Assembly (NCBI GenBank): GCA_002269645.1 | Contig: NIVC01000247.1 | Coordinates: 310,001 to 374,000 of the forward strand | DNA length: 64,000 nt | Direction of reading: 5' to 3' | Source of the DNA: Macrostomum lignano | Taxonomy: Eukaryota | In this document: positions 1 to 33,301 of the stretch, in pieces | Numbering within the stretch: the first letter of the stretch is position 1 | Layout: each line of letters opens with the position of its first letter | Notes under the pieces: generated by a model | The model's database searches: none | What the model was told of the DNA's origin: nothing | Seen by the model: the letters and a program-made list of their open reading frames with translations, nothing else | Translations under genes and position numbers: made by a program

Positions 1-249
1 TGAGTGTGAACAGCTGGCCCTGGACTGTGCTCAGCCGTCTCATGATGTATTTTTCTTGGAAGCTGAAGCTCACTCTGAGCTCGTTGGTCGAGCTCGGTCT
101 GGTCGCCCGCACGAGGTGAACCTTATCATCGGATCTAAGCAGTTTTTCAATTCTGTCCTCACAGAAACTGCTGCAGCACTCGATCGCATGGCACGTGTCC
201 TGTGCAGGCCGCACGCCGCACGCCGTGGCTGTCACTGCAGGTTGGCTGC
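1..249 (-). CDS. ANK-cGLR paralog A, exon 4 (Mab-21 domain; runs off the window edge)
   Basis: Acceptor ctctgcag|GC, phase 1. Reads SQPAVTATACGVRPAQDTCHAIECC...VHLVRATRPSSTNELRVSFSFQEKYIMRRLSTVQGQLFTL, homologous to 14322-14573. Confidence 0.85.
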
Positions 250-804: not shown

Positions 805-1169
805 CTGCTCCCGCTGTCACCTGTGCGTGGCCCTCCGTGACCTGAAGCCAAGTGGCGTCTCTGCAGGAGTCCTCATTTCTTTTGCAGCCACCTTTCAGAT
901 GGAACTCTTGCCCATCAACCAGCACAGTCCAGTCAATGTCCGAGTCTGCAGCTGTCCTGCCGTTCACTTGCACCAGACTGTTGGCCCAGCCCTCTGCGTA
1001 GCTGCCCGTCATCTGCCTGCGATCCTGTGTGAGGACTCGAGCGACTCCTTGCAGCCAGTCAGCCAGTTCCTGCTGCCACCATGCACTCTGCTCAGTGAAT
1101 CCCGCAACGCCGAGCAGTAGATACAGCTCCTTGCTCAGGCACCAGTCTTGCCTGTAGTCGTCTGAGAGC
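805..1169 (-). CDS. ANK-cGLR paralog A, exon 3: nucleotidyltransferase N-lobe (GS...DSDID)
   Basis: Acceptor cattccag|G, donor CAG|GTGAGT, 365 nt, phase 2-1. Encodes QMTGSYAEGWANSLVQVNGRTAADSDIDW. Confidence 0.85.
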
Positions 1170-1720: not shown

Positions 1721-1774
1721 CGATGAGGGTCCGAATCCAGGCGATGAGCGGCTGCCTGCCGGGCCTCTGGGCTT
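1721..1774 (-). CDS. ANK-cGLR paralog A, exon 2 (54-nt linker, GSPEARQAAAHRLDSDPHR)
   Basis: Acceptor ctttcctttccgcattgcag|, donor CG|GTGAGT, phase 2-2, no stops. Conserved in paralog B, with 3 of the 5 changed codons synonymous. Confidence 0.8.
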
Positions 1775-2464: not shown

Positions 2465-5400
2465 CCCGCTCCACTCGGATCCAGCACCCGCAGCACCTGC
2501 CGCTGCTCAAATCGTTCTGCCACCTGCGCACACGTCAGACCCCGACCGTCTCGATGACTCGCATCCGCTCCTCTGTCCATCAGAGCCTTGGCTGCTCGCG
2601 CGTGACCGGCTTCGCACGCTCGTGACAGAGCAGTCCGACCCTGACTGTCTTCAGCACGCACTGACGCACCGAGATCGATGAGTTTCTCAATGAGCTCGTG
2701 ATGACCTGCATCAGCTGCCAGCATGAGAGCAGTGGCTCCAGTGCTGTCTGGCAGATCGACATGCTCTGCGCTGACTCGCTTATCATTGATCAGTGTGACA
2801 GCAAGAGCGACGTGTCTTTGAGAGATGGAGAGACGGAGCAGCTGTGTGATGTGAGCTGGCTGCATTCGAGAGAGGGTGTCGGTGAGAACAGAGTTCCTGC
2901 CTTCGATGGCCATTGCTGCAGTGAAGCTGAGGATGGTGCTGGATTGGAAGAGCCAATCGGGCTCGAGGCCGAAGGAGGCAACGGCATAATCGTGAAGACG
3001 AGAGCAAGCGTTGACTGCGTATTGGAAACGGAGATTCGCTACCTGATCCGGACTTGAGAGACACGAGATGGACTCGACGACTTCTGAGTGACCAAATATT
3101 GTAGCAAATTTGGCAGCGTTGATGCAGCAGCGATCTCTGTCTGCTTGGTCAGCGACTTGTGACACGAAAAACTTGACGACTTCCCACTGACCCTTTCTTG
3201 CAGCAGATTCGGCAGCTTCGATGCAGCAGCGATCTCTGTTTGCTTGGTCAGTGATTTGTGGCACGAGAAACTTGACAACTTCCCACTGACCCTTTCTTGC
3301 AGCAGATTCGGCAGCGTCGATGCAGCAGCGATCTCTGTTTGCTTGGTCAGCGAGTTTTGTCACGAGAAACTTGACGAGTTCCCACTGACCCTTTTCTACA
3401 GCATATTTGGCAGCGTTGATGCAGCAGCGATCTCTGTTTCCTTGGTCAGCGACTTGTGGCACGAGAAACTTAACGACTTCCCACTGATCATTTCTTGCAG
3501 CAGATTCGGCAGCGTTGATGCAGCACTGATCTCTGTTTGCTTGGTCAGCGACTTGTGGCACGAGAAACTTGATGACTTCTAATTGACCCTTTCTTGCAGC
3601 AGATTCGGCAGCGTCAAAGCAGCACTGATCTCTGTTTGCTTGGTTAGCGATTTGTGGCACGAAGAACTTGACGACTTCTAATTGACCCTTTCTTGCAGCA
3701 GATTCGGCAGCGTCGATGCAGCAGCGATCTCTGTTTCCTTGGTCAGCGACTTGTGGCACGAGAAACTTGACGAATTCCCACTGACCCTTTTCTACAGCAT
3801 ATTTGGCAGCGTTGATGCAGCAGCGATCTCTGTTTCCTTGGTCAGCGACTTGTGGCACGAGAAACTTAACGACTTCCCACTGATCATTTATTGCAGCAGA
3901 TTCGGCAGCTTTGATGCAGCACTGATCTCTGTTTGCTTGGTCAGCGACTTGTGGCACGAGAAACTTAACGACTTCCCACTGATCATTTATTGCAGCAGAT
4001 TCGGCAGCTTTGATGCAGCACTGATCTCTGTTTGCTTGGTCAGCGATTTGTGGCACGAGAAACTTGACGACTTCTAATTGACCCTTTCTTGCAGCAGATT
4101 CGGCAGCGTCGATGCAGCAGCGATCTCTGTTTCGTTGGTCAGCGACTTGTGGCACGAGAAATTTAACGACTTCCCACTGACGAAATATTGTAGCAGATTC
4201 AGCAGCTTTGATGCAGCAGCGATCTCTGTTTGCTTGGTCAGCGACTTGTGGCACGAGAAACTTGACGACTTCTAATTGACCCTTTCCTGCAGCAGATTCG
4301 GCAGCTTCGATGCAGCAGCGATCTCTGTTTGCTTGGTCAGTCATTTGTGGCACGAGAAACTTGACGACTTCTAATTGACCCTTTCCTGCAGCAGATTCGG
4401 CACCTTCGATGCAGCAGCGATCTCTGTTTGCTTGGTCAGTCATTTGTGGCACGAGAAACTTGACGACTTCTAATTGACCCTTTCTTGCAGCAGATTCGGC
4501 AGCGTCGATGCAGCAGCGATCTCTGTTTCGTTGGTCAGCGACTTGTGGCACGAGAAATTTAACGACTTCCCACTGACGAAATATTGTAGCAGATTCAGCA
4601 GCTTTGATGCAGCAGCGATCTCTGTTTGCTTGGTCAGCGACTTGTGGCACGAGAAACTTGACGACTTCTAATTGACCCTTTCCTGCAGCAGATTCGGCAG
4701 CTTCGATGCAGCAGCGATCTCTGTTTGCTTGGTCAGTCATTTGTGGCACGAGAAACTTGACGAGTTCCCACTGACCATTTTCTACAGCATATTTGGCAGC
4801 GTTGATGCAGCAGCGATCTCTGTTTGCTTGGTCAGCGATTTGTGGCACGAGAAATTTAACGACTTCCCACTGACGAAATATTGTAGCAGATTCAGCAGCT
4901 TTGATGCAGAACTGATCTCTGTTTGCTTGGTCAGCGATTTGTGGCACGAGAAACTTGATGACTTCTGAGTCACCAAATTTTGCAGCAAATTTGGCAGCGT
5001 CGAAGCAGCAGCGATCTCTGTTTGCTTGGTCAGCGATTTGTGGCACGAGAAACTTGACGACTTCTAAGTGACCATTTGTTGCTGCAGATTCGGCAGCGTC
5101 GATGAAGCAGCGATCTCTGTTTGCTTGGTCAGCGATTTGTGGCACGAGAAACTTGACGACTTCTAATTGACCCTTTCTTGCAGCAGATTCGGCAGCGTCG
5201 ATGCAGCAGCGATCTCTGTCTGCTTGGTCAGCGATTTGTGGCACGAGAAATTTAACGACTTCCCACTGACGAAATATTGTAGCAGATTCAGCAGCTTTGA
5301 TGCAGCAGCGATCTCTGTTTTCTTGGTCAGCGATTTGTGGCACGAGAAACTTGATGACTTCTGAGTCACCAAATTTTGCAGCAAATTTGGCAGCGTGGAA

Positions 5401-5691
5401 GCAGCAGCGATCTCTGTTTCCTTGGTCAGTGATTTGTGGCACGAGAAACTTGACGACTTCTAATTGACCCTTTCTTGCAGCAGATTCGGCAGCGTTGATG
5501 CAGCAATGATCTCTGTTTGCTTGGTCAGAAATTTTCCGCACGAGTGACTCGACGTCTTCAAAGTGGCTATTTGTTGCAGCATCTGCAGTAGCTTGTACGG
5601 CTTGTAATTGTCCGTCTTGTGCAGCCCCTCGATCGTTTTGTGAGATTTCGCTGCTGGTGACGACACGATTCCCGCTTTGGTTTTGGTCCAT
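2465..5691 (-). CDS. ANK-cGLR paralog A, exon 1: 25 x 33-aa ankyrin-like cassettes plus canonical C-terminal ankyrin repeats
   Basis: ATG at 5691 (ataATGG). 25 repeats of consensus DQANRDRCCIDAAESAARKGQLEVVKFLVPQVA, then DSTGATALMLAADAGHHELIEKLIDLGAS / DSQGRTALSRACEAGH. The apparent TGA stop lies inside a GG|GTGAGT donor (phase 2) at 2464. Confidence 0.88.
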
Positions 5692-5742: not shown

Positions 5743-6104
5743 GGCTGCTGTTACAGTGGCAGATGTGAGTCACGGCTGCTGTCAGAGTGGCAGATGTCAG
5801 TCACGGCTGCTGTCAGAGTGGCAGATGTCAGTCACGGCTGCTGTCAGAGTGGCAGATGTCAGTCACGGCTGCTGTCAGAGTGGCAGATGTCAGTCACGGC
5901 TGCTGTCAGAGTGGCAGGTGTCAGTCACGGCTGCTGTCAGAGTGGCAGATGTGAGTCACGGCTGCTGTCAGAGTGGCAGATGTGAGTCACGGCTGCTGTC
6001 AGAGTGGCAGATGTGAGTCACGGCTGCTGTCAGAGTGGCAGATGTCAGTCACGGCTGCTGTCAGAGTGGCAGATGTCAGTCACGGCTGCTGTCAGAGTGG
6101 CAGG
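5743..6104. repeat. 31-bp minisatellite, about 11 copies, just upstream of the paralog A ATG
   Basis: Unit cacggctgctgtcagagtggcagatgtcagt; only about 2 copies at 21617-21678. Confidence 0.95.
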
Positions 6105-6997
6105 TGTTTCAAAGATTTGTGCAGCCGGTTGCCAGAAAGATTTTACCGCCTCATCTCTCAGCTGCCCGCCCTTTTGCAGCCTCTGGCGAGGCCGACCACC
6201 CCTGAGCAGTCGAAACTTCTCTCCCGAGCATGAGCGCTGAGTCCACCGCCTTCGCCTCTGTGCACCCAGCATGGCAACGGAGAGGCTGCGGCTGCAGCGG
6301 CCACCCCAAGCTGTACTTGATGAGGCTGAGCTGACCCATTGTGCCTCAGTGCAGTGTGAGATCTTTAAATGCATTTAATGGCCCACTGAGCGGTGTAAAA
6401 TGCTGCTCAGTACCGCAGTGCATCGGTTTGAGGAGGGGGTCGAATGTACAGAAAATGCATTGTTAAACTGGGCCAGTTTTCTCTCTCACTCTGCCCACTG
6501 GCCTTCTTAACTGCAGCAGCTGCAGAGCATCAGTTGCATAGCAACAGGTCTCTGGCTCTCTCCCGACTCTCCTATGCTTTCACCTGCTTCTCTCGTGCGC
6601 ATCTCAGGCAGTTGAGAGTCTGCTGGGTTGAGTTTGGCGAGTGCATTTAGCAGCAATAATTGAAATTCTTTCGCTTTTCTGCAGAAGCCTCTCATCACTG
6701 CCGCTCCTTCTGTTTCATGTTTTGAACAGGTGGCAACCGGCCTCTGTTGCAGGACTTGGCTTGCAATTGGGCAAGCAGAAAATTGCAGTGACGATTTGAT
6801 TTTTCGAAAATCGAATAAATAATTAATCTATAAATTCTATTCATATTTGCCAGGTAGCGCAGTCGCTATGAACAGCATTCAGTAAACGATCAATGAAGAA
6901 TCAATGAACAGTCTTTGTTGAAGTCTTGGGCCACTAAGCCATTGGGACCCGTCAGTGTAAGGAACTCTATCGTATCTTCCTGGTAATCCGGGTAGGA

Positions 6998-7395
6998 TAC
7001 AGTCACCATCCCTACAGTCACCATCCCTACAGTCACCATCCCTACAGTCACCATCCCTACAGTCCCCATCCCTACAGTCACCATCCCTACAGTCAGCATC
7101 CCTACAGTCACCATCCCTGCAGTCACTATCCCTACAGTCCCCATCCCTACAGTCACCATCCCTACAGTCAGCATCCCTGCAGTCACCATCCCTACAGTCA
7201 CCATCCCTACAGTCACCATCCCTACATTCACCATCCCTACAGTCCCCATCCCTACAGTCACCATCCCTACAGTCAGCATTCCTACAGTCAGAATCCCTAC
7301 AGTCACCATCCCTACAGTCACCATCCCTACAGTCCCCATCTCTACAGTCACCATCCCTACAGTCAGCATTCCTACAGTCAGAATCCCTATAGTCT
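6998..7395. repeat. 18-bp minisatellite (cagtcaccatccctacag family), about 22 copies
   Basis: Direct inspection; same family as 22333-23148. Confidence 0.95.
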
Positions 7396-8257: not shown

Positions 8258-9168
8258 CGGGCGAGACAGAGCGAGGGCGAGACAGAGCGAGGGCGAGACA
8301 GAGCGAGGGCGAGACAGAGCGAGGGCGAGACAGAGCGAGGGCGAGACAGAGCGAGGGCGAGACAGAGCGAGGGCGAGACAGAGCGAGGGCGAGACAGAGC
8401 GAGGGCGAGACAGAGCGAGGGCGAGACAGAGCGAGGGCGAGACAGAGCGAGGGCGAGACAGAGCGAGGGCGAGACAGAGCGAGGGCGAGACAGAGCGAGG
8501 GCGAGACAGAGCGAGGGCGAGACAGAGCGAGGGCGAGACAGAGCGAGGGCGAGACAGAGCGAGGGCGAGACAGAGCGAGGGCGAGACAGAGCGAGGGCGA
8601 GACAGAGCGAGGGCGAGACAGAGCGAGGGCGAGACAGAGCGAGGGCGAGACAGAGCGAGGGCGAGACAGAGCGAGGGCGAGACAGAGCGAGGGCGAGACA
8701 GAGCGAGGGCGAGACAGAGCGAGGGCGAGACAGAGCGAGGGCGAGACAGAGCGAGGGCGAGACAGAGCGAGGGCGAGACAGAGCGAGGGCGAGACAGAGC
8801 GAGGGCGAGACAGAGCGAGGGCGAGACAGAGCGCCAGAGGCGCCAGCACCAGAGGCGCCAGCACCAGAGGCGCCAGCACCAGAGGCGCCAGCACCAGAGG
8901 CGCCAGCACCAGAGGCGCCAGCACCAGAGGCGCCAGCACCAGAGGCGCCAGCACCAGAGGCGCCAGCACCAGAGGCGCCAGCGCCAGAGGCGCCAGCGCC
9001 AGAGGCGCCAGCACCAGAGGCGCCAGCACCAGAGGCGCCAGCACCAGAGGCGCCAGCACCAGAGGCGCCAGCACCAGAGGCGCCAGCACCAGAGGCGCCA
9101 GCACCAGAGGCGCCAGCACCAGAGGCGCCAGCACCAGAGGCGCCAGCACCAGAGGCGCCAGCACCAGG
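8258..9168. repeat. Abutting 16-bp (ggcgagacagagcgag, about 36x) and 15-bp (agaggcgccagcacc, about 22x) minisatellites
   Basis: Near-perfect arrays with a switch at about 8833. Confidence 0.95.
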
Positions 9169-10084: not shown

Positions 10085-11334
10085 TTACTCTACTAATTTG
10101 CCGCCGAGGTCAACGCACTTCTGCCAGCGGTGCACCCACGCCTCAAAGGCAGGGCTGCAACCGCCGATGGCCAGATGCCGGAGAGCTGATGAAGCACTGT
10201 TATTAATCTGTTCCACCGAGGCAAAACGTTTACCACGAAGACTCTCCTTCATCCTTGGGAAAACGTAGAAGTCCGCCGGAGCCAAGTCAGGCGAATAGCG
10301 CGGCTGATGCAGAACTTCCCAGTCCCAGGACTCCAGGAAGCTCTTCCACTCTTCTGGCGTGGTGCACAGGCGCATTGTCGTGATGAAAAATGACGCCTCT
10401 CTCCAGCAAGCCAGGTCGCTTCTTTCTGATCGCCGGTCGCAGTTTCTCCTGCAGAATCCATTTGTAATATTCGGCCTTCACCTTGGTACCGACTGGCACA
10501 GGCCAGTCCACCAGAATGCCATGGACGTCGAAGAAGATGATGTGCATCACCTTTGTTGAACTCTGCTTGCGCTGCACCTACTCCGTGCTTGCTGATTCCC
10601 TTGGAAGCCACTGTGCTGACTGGCGCTTCAGCTCAGGATCCCATTCGTAGACCCAAGTCTCATCTCCTGTCACAATCCTGCTGAGGAAGTCGTTGCCTTC
10701 TCGATGAAATCGACGAAGCTGCTCTCTGGACAGCCTCACCCGCTCCTCCATCTGCTCTTCTGTCAGCAGGTGGGGCACCCATTTGGCGAAGATCTTCTGC
10801 ATGCCCAAGTTCTCAGTTAGAATGCGATGCACCGTGCTGTGGGGAATGTCTAGAATTTCCTCGAGCTCAGCGCAAGTGAGCCTGCTGTACTCTGTCACGG
10901 CATCCTTCACACGCTCGGCATTTGCGTCGGTTGTTGCTGTTCTCGGCCTTCCGGAGCGCTCTTCATCTTCCATGCACAGCCTCCCTCCCTGGACCTCACG
11001 AACCCACTTGCGCGTTGTCTGAATTGATGGAGCTTCCTCTCTCAAAACGTCTCCAAGCTCTTCATGAATTGCAGTTGCCGATTTTCCAGCCAAAACTCCA
11101 AACTTGATGATGTTCCGAACGTCAAACCGAGTGAACGAAGCTGACGCGGCCATCTTTGCAAAGTCTATTTGATTTAAGTGATGCTCTGCAGCTTGTGAGC
11201 TTGACAGCACTCTGAAACTTGTCATTCTTCTTTACCATAGACTATAGGTTAGTAAATGGCTAGTGTCTCCTGTCCAAGATGCTATTAATAAATTTTATAC
11301 AATAGCGAAACTTTCCTATGGGATAGCCCTCGTA
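10085..11334 (-). mobile_element. Defective Tc1/mariner (D,D34D mariner) DNA transposon
   Basis: ATG at 11153. Motifs RSGRP, KWVPHLLT, IVTGDETW, HHDNA, YSPDLAPAD, with 34 aa between the last two Asp after frame repair. In-frame TAG at 10578-10580 and a +1 frameshift near 10340. One TIR-like end, TA-CGAGGGCTATCCC, at 11320-11334; no clear opposite TIR. Confidence 0.93.
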
Positions 11335-11730: not shown

Positions 11731-12005
11731 CGTCTTAAATGTCTTACATATCTTAACGTCTTAAATGGTTAAGAGGCATTTAGAGAATCCTATGAAAGAA
11801 GCAGCGGTCTGCTCCGCGTGCTTTTTGACCAAAGCTCAATTTCGATCTACAAATCGAAACCTACAATTGTTTCGTGATCACGGCTCAAATTCACCAGAGA
11901 CCGTTGGGACTGAACACAATAGAGAGAATCAAGATAATCGGTATGCTCGTAGTCAGCGAAACCGCAGTAGACTCGGCCAGGAGAAACGGGGAGAGGACTG
12001 GATAA

Positions 12006-12517
12006 GAGAGGAGAGAAGAGGAGAGGAGAGGAGAGGAGAGGAGAGGAGAGGAGAGGAGAGGAGAGGAGAGGAGAGGAGAGGAGAGGAGAGGAGAGGAGAG
12101 GAGAGAAGAGGAGAGGAGAGGAGAGGAGAGGAGAGGAGAGGAGAGGAGAGGAGAGGAGAGGAGAGGAGAGGAGAGGAGAGGAGAGGAGAGGAGAGAAGAG
12201 GAGAGGAGAGGAGAGGAGAGGAGAGGAGAGGAGAGGAGAGAAGAGGAGAGGAGAGGAGAGGAGAGGAGAGGAGAGGAGAGGAGAGGAGAGAGAGAAGAGG
12301 AGAGGAGAGGAGAGGAGAGGAGAGGAGAGGAGAGGAGAGGAGAGGAGAGGAGAGGAGAGGAGAGGAGAGAAGAGGAGAGGAGAGGAGAGGAGAGGAGAGG
12401 AGAGGAGAGGAGAGGAGAGGAGAGGAGAGGAGAGGAGAGGAGAGGAGAGGAGAGGAGAGGAGAGGAGAGGAGAGGAGAGGAGAGGAGAGGAGAGGAGAGG
12501 AGAGGAGAGGAGAGGAG
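12006..12517. repeat. (AGAGG)n pentamer microsatellite
   Basis: About 100 units. Confidence 0.95.
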
Positions 12518-13134
12518 AATAAATCCGTCCTACCAGTCTCCTAATGATGGAGAGGATTTGTGACGAAATCAGATGGGGCAAAAGGAAAGGAGACGGGAAT
12601 TGGCTTCGTGTCAATGAAATTTGAATAGCAATGGGAGATTTCAGGAGAGAGGAGAGGGAGACACTGGGAGCGTTCAGGCTGTCAGTCACTGATTGTTCAT
12701 GAGGGTTTTCCAGGTTCATGCAGACAACTGCTGCCTGTACATTTGGCTTGAATATTTCATTAAACAACATTGGCAATTGGGTATTGAAGTCCGCAGAACA
12801 AAATCGCGGAGAAAAGCCCGCATCAAAGCCGATACGCAGTTTGAATGGAAAAAGCAACTTAGCATGCAGTGGAAATTGAATCGCAGCACAAATGTACGAA
12901 ACTGCAGTTCATAGCAGGAGGGCTGCTCGCACACGATGGCTCTCGGTGTGCTCATTTCCTAAAAGAGCAACTGAGTCAGCAACAAGGAAAATGTACAAAA
13001 CACAATTCAACAGCATGCACAGACAATAATCGAAGTCATTCATAATCTAAAATATTTACCGGAAATATGTTGAAAAATTTTACTCAAAAAGCTCGCGCAA
13101 AGGCCAGAGAACCTTGAAAAATTACGAGTTCAAC

Positions 13135-14573
13135 TCAAGCTGCTGCATCAAGTCTCTCCAGCTTCTGCCTGACCCAGCCGATCTTCTCCTCGTCCTGCGT
13201 CTCCATGGCGACGCGTCTCTCTTTCTCGATCATCTCCATCTGCTGCAGGCTGAGCTCCACGTGATCGCGGCAGTCGCTGTAGTGAGCCAGAGTGAGCAGC
13301 TCCTCCAAGTCCGGGTCTCCAAGCAGCTGTTCAATCCAATGATCGAATGCGATTGCAGGTGCGCGATTGCGGAGCAGCTCAGCTTGGAGACTCCAGCTCA
13401 GGCAGCGGAAGTTCACGTAAAGGTGGGAGGAGAGAGGCTGCGACAGTCTGGCTGTGAACAGAGTCTGCGTGAACTCGGGAAGGAATGGGAAGCGAGGCGG
13501 AGAGTCGCAGGGGAGGCAGAACCTCCACGCCCAGTCTGACTTATCTGGCAGTTTTATTTTTCTGTTTATTCTTCTTGGAAAGAAATCATCTTCTTGAATA
13601 TCCTGTGACTTCAACCCTGACTCAACCCGATGTCTCTGCAGCTCCATCGCGAGTCTCTCAGCCTCCTCAGATTTTCCGAACTTCAAATGCGCCATGGCGG
13701 TCATGCACAGGGCGGCGCACTTGCACCACTGCAGCTCATGCAAGAGACTGAGCTGCCTCATCAGGGTGTCTCTGTCGCTCGATTCCGACTGCAGCTCGCT
13801 CACACACTGGTGCACCACACTGTACACGTCTGCGAACTTGTAGTACATTTCTGGATAGTCAGTTCCTTTCCTGATCTCCGTGACAGCAGGCGGCGCTGTC
13901 AGAGGCAGCAGAGTGAACGGGTGAAAGTAGAACTTCTCTGACTGCAGAGGTCTCACGAGTCTCCTCAGCTGCTCGACCACTCCGCCGATGTCGCTTCTCA
14001 GTTCACAAAGTCGGTCTCGAACCCTCGCCTTCGTGTTGTGAAAGTCGCCGCCGATTCCAGCGTTCTTGAAGTAGAGCGGAGCGTCGGGCATGAAGAAGTG
14101 CGGCATGCACTCATCGGGCGAGCTGCTTGAGTCGATGAAGCTCAGCATCATATCGAGAGACTCCTTGAGCAGAGCGATTAGATTGTGGAGCTGCCAAGCG
14201 TCAGTTTCAGGATCTGAGCCACGCTTCTCCCGCATTGTGAAGAGCAGAGTCTTTGCATGGTAGGTCTTGAGTCCAGGTGTGTCCAGAGTGAGCGGCAAGT
14301 GTCTCTTGAAGATGAACTTGATGAGTGTAAACAGCTGGCCCTGGACTGTGCTCAGGTTTCTCATGATCCGTTTCTCTTGGAAGCTGAAGCTCACTCTGAG
14401 CTCGTTGGTCGAGCTCGGTCTGGTCGCCCGAACCAGGTGAACTTTGTCAAAGTTGTATGGAAGCAGTTTTTCAATTCTGTCCTTACAGAAACTGCTGCAA
14501 CACTCGATCGCATGGCACGTGTCCTGTGCAGGCCGCACACCGCACGCCGTGGCTGTCACAGCAGGTTGGCTGC
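13135..14573 (-). CDS. ANK-cGLR paralog B, exon 4: Mab-21/cGAS-like C-lobe plus C-terminal helical extension
   Basis: Acceptor ctctgcag|GC, phase 1. Mab-21 hallmarks DTCHAI, ELRVSFSFQEKRIM, LIKFIFK, LKTYHAKTLLF, W..NL..LL, MPHFFMPDAPL. Stop at 13135-13137. Confidence 0.9.
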
Positions 14574-15368
14574 CTGCAGAGCGCAGTGAGTGGAGAGTCG
14601 CTTTGTGGCGAGTGAAAAAGATGGGTTGCTTTGCAACCCATCTGGATAAAATTCAGTAGAGAAAGAGCTGAAATGCTCAACTGTTTGCCACCAATGCGTT
14701 TCATCGCGCATTCGCATCCAAAAGTGCAAGTTGCTTGGGTTGAAAAGTTGGGAAGATGCAAGGAGAATGGAAAGTGCTACGCAAGTCTGGCTACGGGCTT
14801 AAACGACTGACTGAAGTCATTGTGGTACTTACACACTTGCCAAATATACACATGCTCGCTGATGTCATGCCTGTTTATTCAGCCCTCCAATTTTTATTCA
14901 GCAGATTTTTGGGACCCCACCCAAGCTGCTTGATGCACATGTGAGGCTGCAGCTCAGCACAGCTGCTCAAACATCATCAGGACTCAGTGCCCCGCAGCAA
15001 GGCACCAATCAGCCAGCCAGTCAGGGCGGCTTCGGTTTATTTTGTTTGAAATTTTCCAAGTGAGAGCAGCAGCACCTCAGCAGAGCCATGCCGCCTACCG
15101 TGGGTCACCCAAGCACCGCTGCACCCACTCTGCTACCATCGGAGCCTGTGAATTCAAAACTCAATGGCCCGCCTCAGCCAGTCGGCATCAGAGTTTTCTT
15201 TTCAATTTCGCCTGCCGCTTGTTTCAGCACCCAAACCGAAATTCGCAGTCACAGAAGCTGCTGAAGGCCGGGCGCCACTCGGTTGCGAATTTAAAGTTGA
15301 GCAAAGTTAATGGGCTTTCATTTGCATGCGGATCTCAGCATTCTGATGATGAACCCAGCCTCACTCAC

Positions 15369-15730
15369 CTGCTCCCACTGCCACCTGTGCGTGGCCCTCC
15401 TTGACCTGCAGCCGAGTGGCGTCTATGCAGTAACCATTTCTCTCGCAGCCACCTTTCAGATGGAACTCTTGTCCAGCAACCAGCGCAGTCCAATCAATGT
15501 CCGAGTCTGCAGCTGTCCTGCCGTTCACTTGCACCAGACTGTTGGCCCAGCCCTCTGCGTAGCTGCCCGTCATCTGCCTGCCATCCTGTGTGAGGACTTG
15601 AGCGACTTCTTCCAGCCAGTCAGCCAGTCTCTGCTGACACTCTGCTCTCTCCGCGGTGAATCCCGCATTGCTGAGCAGTCGATGCAGCTCCTCGCTCAGG
15701 CAGAAGTCTTGCTGGGAGTCGTCTGAGAGC
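15369..15730 (-). CDS. ANK-cGLR paralog B, exon 3: nucleotidyltransferase N-lobe
   Basis: Acceptor cattctag|G, donor CAG|GTGAGT, 362 nt, phase 2-1. Carries the GS...DSDID motif. Confidence 0.87.
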
Positions 15731-15952
15731 CTAGAATGATGCGAGATGCGTGTGGGTGAGTGAGTTGGATGGACAAAACAAGCAGGAGAGGTGAGAGTGC
15801 AGCTGCTGCTGCACTCAGACTGGCATCTCAAGCAACCCAGTCGAGTCCAACCCAATCTCAACTCTCCTGAGTTTCGCTGCAATTTCTGCCCCAAGCTGCC
15901 AGCCTGTCGGAAGGCGCAATGCGGCAGTAAAAGCTGAACCGGTCAGACTCAC

Positions 15953-16006
15953 CGATGGAGGCCCGAATCCAAGCGGTGAGCGGCTGCCTGCCGGGCCTCC
16001 GGGCTT
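15953..16006 (-). CDS. ANK-cGLR paralog B, exon 2 (54-nt linker, GSPEARQAAAHRLDSGLHR)
   Basis: Acceptor ttgtctttccttcccgcattgcag|, donor CG|GTGAGT, phase 2-2. Confidence 0.8.
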
Positions 16007-16216
16007 CTGCAATGCGGGAAGGAAAGACAAGGTTTTCAGCAGTTGAGTCTGAGATTCTGATGCGGCACAAATCACTTCATTGAGTCGGAAACTCCAATTT
16101 TTTTCACGCGTAGAGCCGAGGAGGCACAGCTTCATCAAAATACCGGCGCTTTTTCAGTTAAGAAATTCAAATAGCGGAGAGAAGGGCGGGCAGAAGCAGA
16201 TGACCGACAGAAAGCA

Positions 16217-16697
16217 GGCAATGAGCCAGAGAGAGCCGTTCGCCCCTGGCAATGAGCCAGAGAGAGCCGTTTGCCCCTGGCAATGAGCCAGAGAGAGCCG
16301 TTTGCCCCTGGCAATGAGCCAGAGAGAGCCGTTTGCCCCTGGCAATGAGCCAGAGAGAGCCGTTCGCCCCTGGCAATGAGCCAGAGAGAGCCGTTCGCCC
16401 CTGGCAATGAGCCAGAGAGAGCCGTTCGCCCCTGGCAATGAGCCAGAGAGAGCCGTTCGCCCCTGGCAATGAGCCAGAGAGAGCCGTTCGCCCCTGGCAA
16501 TGAGCCAGAGAGAGCCGTTCGCCCCTGGCAATGAGCCAGAGAGAACCGATCGCCCCTGGCAATGAGCCAGAGAGAGCCGTTCGCCCCTGGCAATGAGTCA
16601 GAGAGAGCCGTTTGCCCCTGGCAATGAGCCAGAGAGAGCCGTTCGCCCCTCGCAATGAGCCAGAGAGAGCCGTTCGCCCCTGGCAATGAGCCAGAGA
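16217..16697. repeat. 31-bp intronic minisatellite, about 15 copies
   Basis: Unit gcaatgagccagagagagccgttcgcccctg; a single related copy lies in paralog A at about 1988-2018. Confidence 0.95.
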
Positions 16698-17223
16698 AGC
16701 CACAAATTTAGCGCGGAACGGCCGGAGGGAGAAGCAAGAGACGGCAATGCAGACTCGTGAAAAACATCTTACAGCTCTGACTGCCCGGTATAAAAAAGTG
16801 CAAATCGCGAGTATGCTCGCTAATGGAAACGATTGGACAATAAAGTGAAAAACTGGAAACTGTGATTATTTTGTTTTTTACTCAAGCATTACATGCAAAC
16901 AAAATATTTTTTCACATGAGCCCGCTTCACTCCTTCATTTTTTGCCATTCCGCGCTGTGGGTCACTAAAATTATCGCTTGTCTCATCCGAAAATGTAAAA
17001 TTCAAAAAATCTTTCTGTGTCTTTTCTGTCTTCTCTTTCTCTTCCTTTCTTTCTTCCTAACTTTTTCCCTTGTCCCCGTGTTCGCCTCTTCTCCAAAAAC
17101 CAAGCAGGCTTACATTTTATAACTGAAAAATTCTAACAAGATTTTTCTGATAAAGTTGCAGAAATGCTTCACTAAAGCACGATGCAGTACTGAAAGGATT
17201 CGCGCAACTCTCGCCTCACTCAC

Positions 17224-20200
17224 CCCGCTCGACTGGCATCCAGCAGCCGCAGCACCTGCCACTGCTCAAATCGCTCTGCCACTTGCGCACACGTCAGACC
17301 CCGACCGTCTCGATGACTCGCATCCGCTCCTCTGTCCATCAGAGCCTTGGCCGCTCGCACGTGACCGGCTTCGCATGCTCGTGACAGAGCAGTCCGACCC
17401 TGACTGTCTTCAGCACGCACTGACGCACCGAGATCGATGAGTTTCTCAATGAGCTCGTGATGACCTGCATCAGCTGCCAGCATGAGAGCAGTGGCTCCAG
17501 TGCTGTCTGGCAGATCGACATGCTGTGTGCTGACTCGCTCATCATCGATCAGTGTGACAGCAAGAGCGACGTGTCTTTGAGAGATGGAAAGACGGAGCAG
17601 CTGTGTGATGTGAGCTGGCTGCATTCGAGAGAGAGTGCCGGTGAGAACAGAGTTCCTGCCTTCGATGGCCATTGCTGCAGTGAAGCTGAGGATGGTGCTG
17701 GATTGGAAGAGCCAGTCTGGCTCGAGGCCGAGGGAAGCAGCGGCATTTTCGCGAAGACGAGAGCAAGCCGCGACTGCGCATTGGAAATGGAGATTCGCTC
17801 TCTGATCCGGAATTGAGAGACACGAGATGAGAAACTTTACGACATTCCACTGACCATTTTTCACAGCAGATTCGGCAGCTTTGATGCAGCAGCGATCTCT
17901 GTTTTCTTGGTCAGCGACTTGTTGCACGAGAAACTTGACGACTTCTAAGTGATTATTTCGTGCAGCAGATCTGGCTGCCTCAATGCAGCAGCGATCTCTG
18001 TTTGCTTGGTCAGCGACTTGTTGCACGAGAAACTTGACGACTTCCCACTGACCATTTTCTACAGCAGATTCGGCAGCGTCGATGCAGCAGCGATCTCTGT
18101 TTTCTTGGTCAGCGACTTGTTGCACGAGAAACTTGACGACTTCTAAGTGATTATTTCGTGCAGCAGATCTGGCTGCCTCAATGCAGCAGCGATCTCTGTT
18201 TGCTTGGTCAGCGACTTGTTGCACGAGAAACTTGACGACTTCCCACTGACCATTTTCTGCAGCAGATTTGGCAGCGTCGATGCAGCAACGATCTCTGTTT
18301 GCTTGGTCAGCGACTTGTGACAGGAGAAACTTGACGACTTCCCACTGACGATTTCTTGCAGCAGGTTTAGCAGCAACGATGCAGCAGCGATCTCTGTTTG
18401 CTTGGTCAGCGACTTGTGGCACGAGAAACTTGACGACTTTCCACTGACCATTTCTTGCAGCAGATTCGACAGCGTCGATGCAGCAGCGATCTCTGTTTGC
18501 TTGGTCAGCGACTTGTGGCACGAAAAACTTGACGAAATTCCACTGACCATTTCTTGCAGCAGATTCGACGCAGCAGCGATCTCTGGTTGCTTGGTCAGCG
18601 ACTTGTGGCACGAGAAATTTGACGACTTCCCACTGACCGTTCATAGCAGCAGATTTGACGGCGTCAATGCAGCAGCGATCTCTGTTTGCTTGGTCAGCGA
18701 CTAGTAGCACGAGAAACTCGACGACTTCTAAGTGACCGTTTTCTGCAGCAGATTTGGCAGACTCGATGCAGCAGCGATCTCTGTTTTCTTGGTCAGCGAA
18801 TTGTGGCACGAGAAACTTGACGACTTCTAAGTGACCGTAATGTGCAGCAAATACAGCAGCGCCGATGCAGCAGCGATCTCTCTTTGCTTGGTCAGTGACT
18901 TGTGGCACAAGAAATTTGACGACTTCTAACTGACCATTTCTTCCAGCAGATTCGGCAGCGCTGATGCAGCAGCGATCTCTTTTTGCTTGGTCAGCGACTT
19001 GTGGCACGAGAAACTTGACGACTTCCCACTGACCATTTATTGCAGCAGATTTTACGGCGTCAATGCAGCAGCGATCTCTGTTTGCTTGGTCAGCGACTTG
19101 TGACACGAGAAACTTGACGACTTCCCACTGACCATTTTCTGCAGCCGATTCGGCAGCGTCGATGCAGCAGCGATCTCTGTTTGCTTGGTCAGCGACTTGT
19201 GGCACGAGAAACTTGACGACTTCCCACTGACCCTTTCTTGCAGCAGATTCGGCAGCGTCGATGCAGCAGCGATCTCTGTTTGCTTGGTCAGCGACTTGTG
19301 ACACGAGAAACTTGACGACTTCCCACTGACCATTTTCTGCAGCCGATTCGGCAGCGTCGATGCAGCAGCGATCTCTGTTTTCTTGGTCAGCCACTTGTGG
19401 CACGAGAATTTTGACGACTTCCCACTGACCCTTTATTGCAGCATATTCGACAGCGTCGATGCAGCACTGATCTTTGTTTGCTTGGTCAGCGAATTGTGGC
19501 ACGAGAAACTTGACGACTTCTAACTGACCATTTCTTGCAGCAGATTCGACAGCGTCGATGCAGCAGCGATCTCTGGTTGCTTGGTCAGCGACTTGTGGCA
19601 CGAGAAACTTGACGACTTCTAATTGACCCTTTCTTGCAGCAGATTCGGCAGCGTCAAAGCAGCACTGATCTCTGTTTGCTTGGTCAGCGACTAGTAGCAC
19701 GAGAAATTCGACGACTTCTAAGTGACCGTTTTGTGCAGCAAATACAGCAGCGCCGATGCAGCAGCGATCTCTTTTTGCTTGGTCAGTGACTTGTGGCACA
19801 AGAAATTTGACGACTTCTAACTGACCATTTCTTCCAGCAGATTCGGCAGCGCTAATGCAGCAGCGATCTCTTTTTGCTTGGTCAGTGACTTGTGACACGA
19901 GAAACTCGACGACTTTCATCTGACCTTCTCTAGCAGCAGATTCGGCAGCGTTGATGCAGCAGCGATCTCTGTTTGCTTGTTTAGTGACTTGTGGCACGAG
20001 AAACTCGACGACTTCTAACTGACCATTTCTTCCAGCAGATTCGGCAGCGCCGATGCAGCAGCGATCTTTGTTTGCTTGGTCAGCGATTTGTGGCACGAGA
20101 AACTTGACGACTTCTAACTGACCATTTCTTGCAGCAGATTCGACAGCGTCGATGCAGCAGCGATCTCTGTTTGCTTGGTCAGCGACTAGTAGCACGAGAA

Positions 20201-21351
20201 ACTCGACGACTTCTAAGTGACCGTTTTCTGCAGCAGATTTGGCAGCCTCGATGCAGCAGCGATCTTTGTTTTCTTGGTCAGCGACTTGTGGCACGAGAAA
20301 CTTGATGACTTTTAAGTGACCGGTGTCTGCAGCAAACATGGCAGCGTCGATGCCGCACTGATCTCTTTTTTCTTGGTAAGCGACTTGTGGCACGAGAAAC
20401 TCGACGACTTCTAAATGACCATTTCTTGCAGCAAATAAGGCAGCGTTTATGCAGCAGCGATCTCTGTTTGCTTGGTCAGCGACTTGCGACACGAGAAATT
20501 TTACCACTTCTAAGTGACCATTTTTCGCAGCAGATTCGGCAGCTTCGATGCAGCAGCGATCTCTGTTTGCTTGGTCAGCGATTTTTGTCAAGAGAAACTT
20601 GGCGACTTTCCACTGACCCTTTCTTGCAGCAGATTCGGCAGTCTTGATGCAGCAGTAATTTCTGTTTTGCTTGGTCAGCGACTTGCAACACGAGAAACTC
20701 GACAACTTCTAAGTGACCATTTGTCGCAGCAGTTTCGACAGCGTCGATGCAGCACTGTTCTTTGTTTGCTTTGTCAGCGACTTCTGACAAGAGAAACTTG
20801 GCGACTTTCCACTGACCCATTCTTGCAGCAGATTCGGCAGCTTCGATGCAGCAGCGATCTCTGTTTGCTTGGTCAGCGACTTGTGGCACGAGAAACTTGA
20901 CCACTTTTAAGTGGCCATTTGTTGCAGCAGATTCGGCAGTCTTGATGCAGCAGCGATTTCTGTTTGCTTGGTCAGCGACTTGCGACACGAGAAACTCGAC
21001 AACTTCTAAGTGACCATTTGTCGCAGCAGTTTCGACAGCGTCGATGCAGCACTGATCTTTGTTTGCTTTGTCAGCGACTTCTGACAAGAGAAACTCGACG
21101 ACTTCTAAATGACCATTTCTTGCAGCAGATTTGGCAGCGTCGATGCAGCAGCGATCTCTGTTTGCTTGGTCAGCGACTTGTGGCACGAGAAACTTGACGA
21201 CTTCCCACTGGCTATTTCTTGCAGCCAGTTGAGCATTTTCTATGCAAAAGCGGGTCTTCCTTCTTTGTCCCGGTCGAAGCCGCAGATGAGCTCTTACTGC
21301 CGGGATGTTGCCCCTGGTGACGGCCTGACGGCTGCTGAGGTTTTGGCCCAT
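17224..21351 (-). CDS. ANK-cGLR paralog B, exon 1: about 35 x 33-aa ankyrin-like cassettes plus canonical ankyrin repeats; one +1 frameshift at about 20665
   Basis: ORFs 20575..21351 and 17220..20705 are joined by removing one T from TTTT at 20665-20668 (other units have TTT). That gives 4127 nt = 1375 codons + 2, matching the phase-2 GG|GTGAGT donor at 17223. Confidence 0.82.
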
Positions 21352-22332: not shown

Positions 22333-23148
22333 ACCATCCCTACAGTCACCATCCCTACAGTCAGCATCCCTACAGTCACCATCCCTACAGTCACCATCCC
22401 TACAGTCAGCATCCCTACAGTCCCCATCCCTACAGTCACCATCCCTACAGTCAGCATCCCTACAGTCAGCATCCCTACAGTCACCATCCCTACAGTCACC
22501 ATCCCTACAGTCAGCATCCCTACAGTCACCATCCCTACAGTCAGCATCCCTACAGTCAGCATCCCTACAGTCACCATCCCTACAGTCACCATCCATACAG
22601 TCAGCATCCCTACAGTCAGCATCCCTACAGTCACCATCCCTACAGTCACCATCCCTACAGTCACCATCCCTACAGTCAGCATCCCTACAGTCACCATCCC
22701 TACAGTCACCATCCCTACAGTCACCATCCTTACAGTCAGCATCCCTACAGTCACCATCCCTACAGTCAGCATCCCTACAGTCACCATCCCTACAGTCACC
22801 ATCCCTACAGTCACCATCCCTGCAGTCACCATCCCTACAGCCAGCATCCTTACAGCCACCATCCCTACAGTCACCATCCCTACAGTCAGCATCCCTACAG
22901 TCAGCATCCCTACAGTCACCATCCCTACAGTCACCATCCCTACAGTCAGCATCCCTACAGTCACCATCCCTACAGTCACCATCCCTGCAGTCACCATCCC
23001 TGCAGTCACCATCCCTGCAGTCACCATCCCTACAGTCAGCATCCTTACAGCCACCATCCCTACAGTCACCATCCCTGCAGTCACCATCCCTGCAGTCACC
23101 ATCCCTGCAGTCACCATCCCTACAGTCAGCATCCTTACAGCCACCATC
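22333..23148. repeat. 18-bp minisatellite, about 45 copies
   Basis: accatccctacagtc(acc/agc) variants. Confidence 0.95.
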
Positions 23149-23744
23149 TTTGTAATATTCTCAAAGTTTTCAATACACATACACATAAGTATCCGCAGCA
23201 GTGCAGCAATTGGCTGCTTATCATTTAGTGTCAGAACAAAGTCAGCTGTGATTGTTACAGATTGGAGTTAATTCTCGCATAAGACATGAGCAGAGGTCAT
23301 TGGATGGCTTCGAAGTCCCTGTGGGCTGATTCAGCAGGGCCAGCCCCTTGCCAAGCTGACCACAGAAAGCTGGCAGATGGTCAAATGACTCTGACTTGAG
23401 GCAACCACAGATACAGGTGCCACCCTTATGGTGTTGGGTCTCATTGAAAAATAATTTCTTAATAGATTAGGCACCGGAAAGAATCATTTTAAAAACTTAA
23501 GACTGCAATGCCAGAATTTTACATTGCAAAATCATGAAGTCTTATGCTAACGAAGTGGCTGACAAGTCTCTTCGGCACACTGAAGCTTCCTGACTGTTTA
23601 AGTGACTGACGGTTGGTCACCTTTTGCTGTCAAATAACTATCAATGAAGAATAGAGGTAAATCAAGCTAAAATAATGATAGAAACTCAACTTTTGACCTC
23701 TTGGAAATGACATGCACCTGGACAGGGATCGTGGTAGGAGTGCC

Positions 23745-24217
23745 AGGCAAGAGACAGGGGTGCCCGGCAAGAGACAGGGGTTCCCGGCAAGAGACAGGGG
23801 TTCCCGGCAAGAGACAGGGGTGCCCGGCAAGAGACAGGGGTTCCCGGCAAGAGACAGGGGTTCCCGGCAAGAGACAGGGGTGCCCGGCAAGAGACAGGGG
23901 CACCCGGCAAGAGACAGGGGTTCCCGGCAAGAGACAGGGGTGCCCGGCAAGAGACAGGGGTGCCCGGCAAGAGACAGGGGTTCCCGGCAAGAGACAGGGG
24001 TTCCCGGCAAGAGACAGGGGTGCCCGGCAAGAGACAGGGGTTCCCGGCAAGAGACAGGGGTTCCCGGCAAGAGACAGGGGTGCCCGGCAAGAGACAGGGG
24101 TTCCCGGCAAGAGACAGGGGAGCCCGGCAAGAGACAGGGGCACCCGGCAAGAGACAGGGGTTCCCGGCAAGAGACAGGGGAGCCCGACAAGAGACAGGGG
24201 TGCCCGGCAAGAGACAG
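23745..24217. repeat. 20-bp minisatellite (gttcccggcaagagacaggg), about 23 copies
   Basis: Direct inspection. Confidence 0.95.
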
Positions 24218-33130: not shown

Positions 33131-33301
33131 AGAGGGTCATCCAGAGAATTCGAGAGAGTCGCAAAGAACCTATCTAATAGCAAACTGAACCGAATGAAAG
33201 CAAACAAGTAATCTCAAAGTCGGGTCCGACCTCAATCAAAAACCGGAGCCACCCAACAGAATTCAAATCCAGAAAAACAACGGTGACAGACTCGAACCTA
33301 C

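What the first reader, a model, noticed from the sequence alone, without database searches (positions are those of the whole stretch)
13135..21351. Hidden splicing fuses a giant ankyrin-cassette array to a cGAS-like (Mab-21) nucleotidyltransferase
Seen in sequence: in both paralogs the apparent stop of the ankyrin ORF (GCG GGG TGA GT) sits inside a consensus GG|GTGAGT donor. A 54-nt phase 2-2 exon, a phase 2-1 exon carrying GS...DSDID and a phase-1 Mab-21 exon then join in frame, with all six splice sites conserved in both copies. B totals 5982 nt (1993 aa) after repairing one homopolymer indel. Established: cGLRs are Mab-21-fold nucleotidyltransferases that make cyclic dinucleotide second messengers in animal innate immunity, and I recall ANK- and TPR-fused cGLRs being noted in invertebrate surveys. 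Inference: this is a sensor-enzyme receptor in which a long, rapidly remodelled repeat solenoid gates second-messenger synthesis. ORF-based annotation would split it into unrelated genes.
Basis: partly seen in the sequence, partly recalled or inferred. Interest (0 to 1): 0.92.

Follow-up and report, generated by a model that had tools for sequence, protein, structure and literature searches.

The report
Spliced ankyrin-array cGAS-like receptor genes
Two tandem flatworm (Macrostomum) genes each join a very long array of near-identical ankyrin cassettes by ordinary splicing to a cGAS-like enzyme domain; the gene model is real, but this receptor type is already annotated and catalogued in this animal, so only the size and turnover of the arrays are new.

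Summary
In both copies the in-frame TGA that ends the ankyrin ORF lies inside a GG|GTGAGT donor. Three further exons then join in frame (54 nt; 362 or 365 nt; the last exon). Applying the same six splice sites to the homeologous locus of the Macrostomum lignano reference genome reproduces exactly a 770-aa GenBank protein whose annotation was built from RNA-seq. The 599-aa tail models well (pLDDT 83). Its best structural matches in the PDB are cGAS and MAB21L1. It keeps the GS, DxD and third-Asp catalytic motif. It is 30% identical to M. lignano ANK-cGLRs that Li et al. 2023 listed and screened.

The splicing is therefore not hidden. RNA-based models already fuse ANK and Mab-21 in this species, and ANK-cGLR fusions are published.

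What is new:
- The arrays hold about 25 and 35 cassettes of 33 aa, against 0 to about 10 in the paralogs I retrieved.
- The arrays show recent duplications within each copy.
- Variation sits on one helix face.
- A Cys-Cys ladder runs along the array.
- A confidently modelled C-terminal domain of about 250 aa has no match in the PDB.

Enzyme activity, ligand and downstream receptor are untested. Copy B carries one homopolymer frameshift. Verdict: new member of a known kind, moderate interest.

The parts
17224..21351 (-). Copy B exon 1. Start codon at 21351-21349 (MGQNLSS...), a 33-aa leader, about 35 ankyrin-like cassettes of 33 aa, a linker, then four canonical ANK repeats. It ends in phase 2 at the donor GG|GTGAGT.
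   Evidence: Pfam Ank_2 E=3e-97.
17829..21225 (-). Copy B cassette array: 99-nt period, 34.4 copies, 84% matches.
   Evidence: Tandem Repeats Finder; unit list; variability by position.
20665..20668 (-). A4 homopolymer in cassette 6 of copy B that carries one extra A and shifts the frame. It splits exon 1 into ORFs 20575-21351 and 17220-20705.
   Evidence: The cassette consensus has A3 here. The data cannot say whether this is a sequencing error or a real mutation.
16007..17223 (-). Copy B intron 1 (1217 nt). It contains a 31-nt minisatellite of 15.7 copies at 16217-16701.
   Evidence: The homeolog L001 has the same intron and repeat.
15953..16006 (-). Copy B exon 2: 54 nt, phase 2 to 2, encoding the linker SPEARQAAAHRLDSGLH.
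   Evidence: The same peptide is present in P0001 and P0042.
15369..15730 (-). Copy B exon 3: 362 nt. It encodes the N-lobe of the nucleotidyltransferase with GS (tail residues 55-56) and DSDID (75-79).
13135..14573 (-). Copy B exon 4. It encodes the third catalytic Asp (tail D138, RPAQDTCHAI), the Mab-21 C-lobe (SFSFQEK...YHAKTLLF...PHFFMP), a C-terminal domain of about 250 aa with no known structural relative, and the stop TGA at 13137-13135.
2465..5691 (-). Copy A exon 1: an intact 1075-aa reading frame (MDQNQS...) with about 25 cassettes (array at 3099-5528), linker and four ANK repeats. It has the same GG|GTGAGT donor.
1721..1774 (-). Copy A exon 2 (54 nt).
805..1169 (-). Copy A exon 3 (365 nt, one codon longer than in B), with GS...DSDID.
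1..249 (-). Copy A exon 4, first 249 nt only. The gene runs off the start of the window.

Best explanation
The window holds two tandem paralogs, A and B, about 15 kb apart on the minus strand, of a gene family specific to Macrostomum. Each gene has four exons.

Gene structure (shown):
- Exon 1 encodes a short leader, a long array of near-identical 33-aa ankyrin-like cassettes (about 25 in A, about 35 in B), a linker and four canonical ANK repeats.
- Ordinary GT-AG splicing removes the apparent stop codon, which is part of the donor.
- It adds a 54-nt linker exon and two exons encoding a cGAS/Mab-21-fold nucleotidyltransferase with an intact GS / DxD / D active-site motif.
- A family-specific C-terminal domain of about 250 aa follows.

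Mechanism (inferred): the protein is a cytosolic, or possibly lipid-anchored, sensor-enzyme of the cGAS-like receptor class. The ANK solenoid binds a ligand, more likely a protein or other non-nucleic-acid molecule than DNA or RNA, because the enzyme core is acidic. Binding relieves an inactive state of the nucleotidyltransferase, which then makes a nucleotide second messenger.

Array dynamics (shown): the arrays grow and shrink by unequal recombination. Paralogs therefore differ greatly in cassette number, and cassettes differ mainly on one face of the inner helix.
For: Gene model:
- Six consensus splice sites with correct phases are present in both copies.
- GGTGAGT is rare in the window, and six of its 15 occurrences are the proposed donors.
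- The same sites in L001 (GCA_002269645.1, NIVC01000085.1) reproduce GenBank protein P0001 exactly. That annotation derives from StringTie/TACO RNA-seq assemblies (PMC5730564).
- The RNA-based models P0042 (PAA62074.1), P0008 and P0012 carry cassettes, ANK and the cGLR domain in one protein.

Fold and active site:
- The AlphaFold2 model has pLDDT 82.9 and pTM 0.86.
- The top 50 Foldseek PDB matches are all cGAS or MAB21L1 (E from 4e-6, TM-score on the target about 0.5).
- GS55-56, D77xD79 and D138 are conserved across paralogs of 37-88% identity and align with the same motifs in PAA86972.1 and PAA45980.1, which Li et al. class as cGLRs (E=2e-37 and 2e-45).
- The family profile matches the cGAS C-lobe motifs.

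Selection for open frames: under random substitution at 4-8% divergence, the frames stay open in fewer than 5% of trials for the tail and fewer than 0.5% for the array ORF.

Array dynamics:
- Nearest-neighbour cassettes lie mostly within the same copy, and several pairs are 100% identical (A8=A12, A9=A13, B18=B20, B29=B31).
- The homeolog L001 has no cassettes.
- Variability peaks at cassette positions 4, 7, 8, 11, 12 and 15. Positions 1-3, 5, 9, 17, 20 and 21 are nearly fixed.

Ligand type: the enzyme core has pI 6.3 against 9.1 for human cGAS. Li et al. link a basic surface to nucleic-acid sensing.
Against: - No transcript data exist for this exact locus. The evidence is from a homeolog of 92-96% identity.
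- Copy B has a frameshift in cassette 6. Copy A is incomplete in the window.
- Pfam Mab-21_C is sub-threshold for this copy (22.5 against 24.1 bits), and the Mab-21 N-terminal model is not hit. phmmer against PDB sequences finds nothing.
- The GS-to-DxD spacing is 20 residues, longer than in cGAS.
- Paralog dN/dS is 0.5-1.0, and exons are no more conserved than introns between A and B.
- Five M. lignano proteins were in the published screen. The three whose rows I read have no entry in the column that marks active enzymes.
- Li et al. state that most flatworms lack cGLRs beyond Mab21-like proteins. Whether M. lignano has a STING gene was not established here.
Confidence: 0.6

Rival explanations
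1. There are two separate genes. The ankyrin ORF really ends at the TGA and is polyadenylated in what I call intron 1. The Mab-21 part is transcribed from its own promoter near 16000.
For: The TGA is in frame. At least one annotated paralog, P0002 (BOX15_Mlig011252g1, 659 aa), is a Mab-21-only model with a different short N-terminus. No transcript data exist for this locus.
Against: The homeolog's RNA-based model uses exactly these junctions. More than 20 annotated paralogs carry ANK and the Mab-21 region in one protein. Splice sites and phases are conserved in A, B and L001. The 54-nt exon is maintained in frame.
Confidence: 0.07
2. These are decaying duplicates. One or both copies are pseudogenes in a highly duplicated neopolyploid genome, and the giant arrays are runaway repeat expansion without function.
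For: Copy B has a frameshift. dN/dS is 0.57-0.99 among paralogs. Exon and intron identities between A and B are similar, 89-92%. Cassette pN/pS is 0.8-1.1. The homeolog L001 lost the whole array and its leader is out of frame.
Against: Apart from one homopolymer base, about 2000 codons in B and about 1300 in A contain no stop. That is very unlikely under neutral drift. Exon length differences between the copies are multiples of three, while introns differ by hundreds of bases. Catalytic residues and framework residues are conserved. An extra A in an A-run is a typical long-read error.
Confidence: 0.15
3. The protein is a non-enzymatic Mab-21 scaffold. It keeps the fold but signals through protein-protein contacts, as proposed for MAB21L1 and for shrimp Mab21 proteins, and makes no nucleotide messenger.
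For: The screened M. lignano relatives whose rows I read have no active-enzyme note. The GS-to-DxD spacing is unusual. The core is acidic. MAB21L1 is among the top structural matches. A recent abstract reports shrimp Mab21 proteins activating IKK-epsilon outside the canonical nucleic-acid sensing paradigm (PMC12928593, abstract only).
Against: GS, DxD and the third Asp are strictly conserved over paralogs down to about 37% identity, whereas the two most distant members have lost them. This pattern is expected if catalysis matters. According to the legend in Li et al., Mab21L1-3 lack a predicted functional active site. Li et al. also say that many cGLRs look inactive in vitro, probably because their ligand is unknown.
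Confidence: 0.2

Closest known systems
Annotated Macrostomum lignano ANK-Mab-21 proteins (for example PAA62074.1 BOX15_Mlig034155g1; the 770-aa protein at NIVC01000085.1:986745-1011690; PAA86972.1 and PAA45980.1 of the Li et al. 2023 cGLR screen)
   Same: They share the architecture: leader, CC-type cassettes, linker, four ANK repeats, the SPEARQAAAH linker exon, the cGLR core and the C-terminal domain. They share the splice junctions. Tail identity is 77-88% to the closest paralogs and 30% to the screened ones.
   Different: The window's copies carry 25 and 35 near-identical cassettes. The retrieved models carry 0 to about 10, and several of them start in the middle of a cassette, so they are truncated. 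No database protein is identical to either copy.
cGAS-like receptors (cGLRs) of animals, including the ANK- and TPR-fused minority (Li et al. 2023, PMC9980059; Slavik et al. 2021, PMC8410604)
   Same: They share the bilobed Mab-21/cGAS fold, the GS / [DE]x[DE] / [DE] motif and the C-lobe motifs WRLSFS-like and SYHxKT. An N-terminal ANK fusion is a listed architecture, and very long ANK-cGLRs occur in other animals (Ank_2 hits up to residue about 2150 in Table S2).
   Different: Sequence similarity to cGAS is weak (14-15% in the structural alignments). There is a 20-residue GS-to-DxD spacer, an acidic core (pI 6.3) and an extra C-terminal domain. No product, ligand or receptor is known.
Highly internally conserved ANK/TPR/WD repeat arrays of fungal NLR-like receptors (from my own knowledge of work by Paoletti, Saupe, Dyrka and colleagues; not checked in papers here)
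   Same: Repeats are near-identical, repeat number is unstable, repeats are shuffled within the array, and variability is confined to a few surface positions.
   Different: There is no NACHT or NB-ARC domain. The output module is a nucleotidyltransferase. Positive selection at the variable positions was not demonstrated (pN/pS 1.08 against 0.82).
MAB21L1 / MB21D2 (Mab-21 proteins with no known product)
   Same: The fold is the same. MAB21L1 (5eom, 5eog) is among the top structural matches.
   Different: The window proteins keep a complete acidic catalytic motif and carry ANK arrays. Li et al. describe Mab21L1-3 as lacking a predicted functional active site.

Membership tests
cGAS-like receptor / Mab-21 nucleotidyltransferase | Bilobed cGAS/Mab-21 fold: a pol-beta-like NTase core plus a helical C-lobe | tested here: met
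   The AlphaFold2 model has pLDDT 82.9. All top-50 Foldseek PDB matches are cGAS or MAB21L1, with E from 4e-6 and 350-400 aligned columns.
cGAS-like receptor / Mab-21 nucleotidyltransferase | Match to the curated Pfam Mab-21 models above the gathering score | tested here: inconclusive
   Mab-21_C (PF20266) scores 22.5 bits against a cut-off of 24.1. The N-terminal Mab-21 model is not hit. Paralogs pass narrowly at 24.3-24.7 bits, and many have PF20266 precomputed.
cGAS-like receptor / Mab-21 nucleotidyltransferase | Catalytic motif G-S ... [D/E]-h-[D/E] ... [D/E] | tested here: met
   GS55-56, D77-I-D79 and D138 are conserved in the family. They align with the same motifs in the published cGLRs PAA86972.1 and PAA45980.1. 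The geometry in the model could not be inspected.
cGAS-like receptor / Mab-21 nucleotidyltransferase | Synthesis of a cyclic or linear nucleotide second messenger on ligand binding | not testable with these tools
   This needs biochemistry. The M. lignano relatives in the published screen whose rows I read carry no active-enzyme note.
cGAS-like receptor / Mab-21 nucleotidyltransferase | A cognate receptor (STING or other) in the same genome | not tested
   M. lignano is not in Table S5 of Li et al.. I had no reliable query sequence and no searchable M. lignano genome.
Ankyrin repeat proteins | Significant match to Ank profile HMMs and a 33-residue period | tested here: met
   Ank_2 E=3e-97 for B and 3e-101 for A. 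The period is 99 nt. The cassette register matches the ANK consensus at GH/GQ 13-14, VV 17-18, FL 20-21 and D 32.
Ankyrin repeat proteins | Canonical G-x-TPLH start of the repeat | tested here: not met
   The cassettes start with C-C-I-x-A-A instead. Only the four terminal repeats look canonical (GATALMLAADAGH). This makes them a divergent ANK subtype; it does not exclude them from the family.
Hypervariable repeat-array immune receptors (fungal NLR type) | High identity between repeats, with variation confined to a few positions, and recombination within the array | tested here: met
   Mean unit identity is 84-85%, and nearest neighbours are mostly 93-100% identical. Entropy peaks at positions 4, 7, 8, 11, 12 and 15.
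Hypervariable repeat-array immune receptors (fungal NLR type) | Positive selection at the variable positions | tested here: inconclusive
   pN/pS is 1.08 at the six variable codons and 0.82 elsewhere. This is a crude pairwise count on units that also recombine.
Hypervariable repeat-array immune receptors (fungal NLR type) | A central NACHT or NB-ARC NTPase | tested here: not met
   Pfam shows no such domain. It is therefore an analogue, not a member.

The most novel reading that the evidence does not exclude
The near-identical cassette arrays are a fast-evolving recognition module. Unequal recombination continually makes new ANK surfaces, and perhaps new array lengths that differ between individuals. 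This would give a flatworm a diversifying repertoire of cGAS-like receptors that sense non-nucleic-acid ligands. The vicinal-cysteine ladder and an N-terminal lipid anchor may contribute, and some family members may be wired directly to caspases.
Probability: 0.2. Interest if true: 0.7.

Novelty: new member of a known kind. Interest (0 to 1): 0.35.

Why it matters
ANK-fused cGLRs are listed in surveys, but none that I found has a known ligand or product. Flatworms are usually described as lacking cGLR immunity. Macrostomum lignano is a laboratory model with RNAi and transgenesis, and the representative search found 136 sequence clusters of this family, all named members from this species. It is therefore a practical place to ask what a repeat-gated cGLR senses. 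The window adds full-length, long-array gene structures that older assemblies appear to truncate or collapse. It also shows that cassette number changes quickly between paralogs. The finding does not overturn anything. It corrects the idea that the fusion is unannotated.

Tried and rejected
- phmmer of the tail against PDB sequences gave no meaningful hit.
- hhalign of the family alignment against human cGAS gave low probability and aligned only the SYHxKT region. A local profile search against six cGLR sequences from Li et al. aligned only the C-lobe, at about 10-21 bits. Correspondence of the N-lobe catalytic residues therefore rests on the flatworm cGLRs and on the fold match.
- I first suspected a cGAS-like zinc ribbon in CHAIECCSSFC. 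I rejected it: the alignment with PAA86972.1 and PAA45980.1 shows this is the strand that follows the third catalytic Asp.
- An exact look-up of the copy A ankyrin ORF in the public collections found no record. The source assembly of the window remains unknown. It is M. lignano or a very close relative, because L001 is 92-96% identical and collinear.
- A separate model of the C-terminal 255 aa had pLDDT 85 but no PDB match better than E of about 1, only vague TPR-like resemblance.
- The cassette pN/pS count gave no clear positive selection.
- My global alignment of intron 1 between A and B failed because of the scoring settings and was not repeated.
- Rfam and tRNA scans of the window were empty.
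- I did not search for STING in Macrostomum, because I had no reliable query and the word-based search would probably miss a divergent flatworm protein. A literature search found nothing useful.
Full report
**What is in the sequence.** On the minus strand there are two paralogous units, B at 21351-13135 and A at 5691-1. A is cut by the window edge.

- In B, the mechanical ORF list shows two ankyrin ORFs in different frames (20575-21351 and 17220-20705), and a 474-aa ORF at 13135-14559.
- The ankyrin ORF's TGA (17222-17220) lies inside GG|GTGAGT. The acceptors are TTGCAG, TCTAG and CTGCAG, and all three donors are GTGAGT.
- The exon phases are 2, 2 and 1. The 618-aa tail has no stop.
- Copy A has the same six sites. 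Its exon 3 is one codon longer.
- GGTGAGT occurs 15 times in the 64-kb window against 6.1 expected, and six of those are the proposed donors.
- B is one base too long (5983 nt). The extra base is an A in GCAAAACAG at 20665-20668, where the cassette consensus has GCAAACAG.
- Tandem Repeats Finder reports 99-nt arrays of 34.4 copies in B and 24.5 copies in A.

**Organism and existing annotation.** A protein search with the tail returned 41 hits. Thirty-eight are named as Macrostomum lignano proteins. Two have no source shown and one is an unnamed JGI protein. Many hits already combine Ank and Mab-21_C domains in one protein.

- One hit, P0001 (770 aa), carries the junction peptide ...LRLLDASRAG/SPEARQAAAHRLDFGLHR/LSDDSQQD....
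- Its locus L001 (GCA_002269645.1, NIVC01000085.1:986745-1011690) is collinear with window 32143-11332 at 92-96% identity. It is a homeolog or close paralog, not the same sequence.
- The GenBank annotation of that assembly was built from genome-guided RNA-seq assemblies, not from ab initio prediction (PMC5730564). The junctions therefore have transcript support in a near-identical locus.
- Other RNA-based models include the cassette region in the same protein: P0042 (PAA62074.1, about 10 cassettes), P0008 and P0012.
- The fusion is real, but it was not hidden from eukaryotic annotation.

**Is the tail a cGAS-like enzyme?**

- Pfam gives only a sub-threshold Mab-21_C hit (22.5 against 24.1 bits). 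phmmer against PDB sequences finds nothing.
- An AlphaFold2 model built on 25 family sequences is confident (pLDDT 82.9, pTM 0.86).
- All of its top 50 Foldseek matches in the PDB are cGAS or MAB21L1 (E from 4e-6, TM-score on the target about 0.5).
- Li et al. 2023 (PMC9980059) report ANK- and TPR-fused cGLRs. They say that most platyhelminths have no cGLRs beyond Mab21-like proteins. They list Ank_2 domains for several M. lignano proteins and put five M. lignano proteins in their 140-enzyme screen.
- The window's tail is 30% identical to two of those proteins (E=2e-37 and 2e-45). GS, DxD and the third Asp align in both.
- In the family alignment GS55-56, D77, D79 and D138 are conserved down to about 37% identity. 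They are lost only in the two most distant members.
- A family profile also matches the cGAS C-lobe motifs.
- The core is acidic (pI 6.3, against 9.1 for human cGAS). By the correlation in Li et al. this argues against direct nucleic-acid sensing.

**The arrays.** Each cassette is 33 aa (CCIDAAESAARNGQLEVVKFLVPQVADQANRDR) and is in register with the ANK consensus. CCIxAA stands where canonical repeats have G-x-TPLH.

- Over 57 cassettes, entropy peaks at positions 4, 11 and 12 (1.8-2.5 bits) and at 7, 8 and 15 (1.2-1.4 bits).
- This is an i, i+3/4 pattern on one face of the first helix. Positions 11-12 are the pair just before GH. From memory, these are the two residues randomised in designed ankyrin binders.
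- Positions 1-3, 5, 9, 17, 20 and 21 are nearly invariant.
- Nearest-neighbour cassettes are mostly within the same gene copy. Several pairs are identical in a 4-unit (A) or 2-unit (B) register, which shows duplications within the array after A and B split.
- L001 has no cassettes at all.
- The retrieved annotated paralogs have 0 to about 10 near-identical cassettes, and several models begin in the middle of a cassette.
- More distant members (P0045, P0047) appear by eye to have 20 or more diverged cassettes. P0054 and P0068 have about 25 canonical ANK repeats.
- A crude pN/pS count gives 1.08 at the variable codons and 0.82 elsewhere. I cannot claim diversifying selection.

**Are the genes alive?**

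- dN/dS for the tail is 0.57 (B against L001, and A against B) and about 1.0 (A against L001).
- Exons are no more conserved than introns between A and B, both at 89-92%.
- Even so, random substitution at 4-8% would leave the tail open in fewer than 5% of trials and the 3.2-kb ankyrin ORF in fewer than 0.5%.
- Exon length differences between the copies are multiples of three, while introns differ by hundreds of bases.
- I read this as fast-evolving but maintained genes. Copy B is either recently frameshifted or carries a homopolymer sequencing error.

**The C-terminal domain.** Tail residues 345-599 model confidently (pLDDT 85). They form helical hairpins plus a small sheet. No PDB match is better than E of about 1. 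The role of this domain is unknown.

**Family size.** An exhaustive profile-free search found 136 representative clusters at E<=1e-3, 64 of them at E<=1e-30. All eight queried members that carry an organism name are M. lignano. Two are unnamed ENA proteins and one is an unnamed JGI protein.

**Verdict.**

- The functional part (a solenoid gating messenger synthesis) is a reasonable inference and is untested.
- The novelty claim is not supported, because this architecture in this species is already annotated and catalogued.
- The new points are the full-length 25- and 35-cassette arrays and their turnover, the concentration of variation on one helix face, the Cys-Cys ladder and the unmatched C-terminal domain.

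Noticed in passing
window 17829-21225 and 3099-5528 (minus strand): Every cassette begins with two adjacent cysteines (RDR-CC-I) where canonical ANK repeats have G-x-TPLH. This puts about 70 cysteines in a regular ladder along the copy B solenoid. Metal binding, redox sensing or palmitoylation are possible. None was tested.
   Followed up: partly
window 21351-21331 (B), 5691-5671 (A); L001 9777: The N-termini MGQNLSS (B), MGQKLSS (L001) and MGQNQS (P0008) fit the MGxxxS N-myristoylation pattern. Copy A and P0012 start MDQ and lack the glycine.
   Followed up: no
L001 9777-10000 (NIVC01000085.1): [quoted passage not shown] The annotated protein therefore starts at a downstream Met. This is either a real array loss or an assembly collapse.
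   Followed up: partly
window 16217-16701; 1224-1613: The introns carry copy-specific minisatellites. A 31-nt unit of 15.7 copies lies in intron 1 of B and also in L001. A 50-nt unit of 7.8 copies lies in intron 2 of A only. One database protein (P0014) is a read-through model that translates the 31-nt repeat.
   Followed up: partly
window 6998-7394, 22333-23148, 8259-9167, 11990-12518, 5743-6107, 23736-24000: There are many short-unit tandem arrays around the genes. They include the same 15-nt unit upstream of both copies, 16-nt and 15-nt arrays that are open in all six frames, and (GGAGA)x106.
   Followed up: no
window 10578-11225 (minus strand): An ORF with HTH_32 and Mos1-type HTH_48 domains lies between the two gene copies. 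It looks like a mariner/Tc1-like transposase remnant.
   Followed up: no
window 33263-34384 (minus strand): This exon has a calponin-homology domain. It matches the CH plus GAS2 neighbour gene seen upstream of the homeolog in L001.
   Followed up: no
P0047 = PAA93319.1 (BOX15_Mlig026614g1), not in the window: A 2111-aa RNA-based model carries diverged cassettes, ANK, the cGLR domain, a second ANK block and a caspase domain (Peptidase_C14) in one protein. ANK-caspases are a known flatworm feature (PMC11463336). A cGLR-caspase fusion would be notable if it is not a merged gene model. P0043 similarly ends in a RING finger.
   Followed up: partly
P0037 (UniProt, M. lignano), not in the window: A B-box/Tudor protein shares the C-lobe and C-terminal domain of this family (33% identity over tail residues 167-595) but not the N-lobe. 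Parts of the module are therefore reused in other architectures.
   Followed up: no
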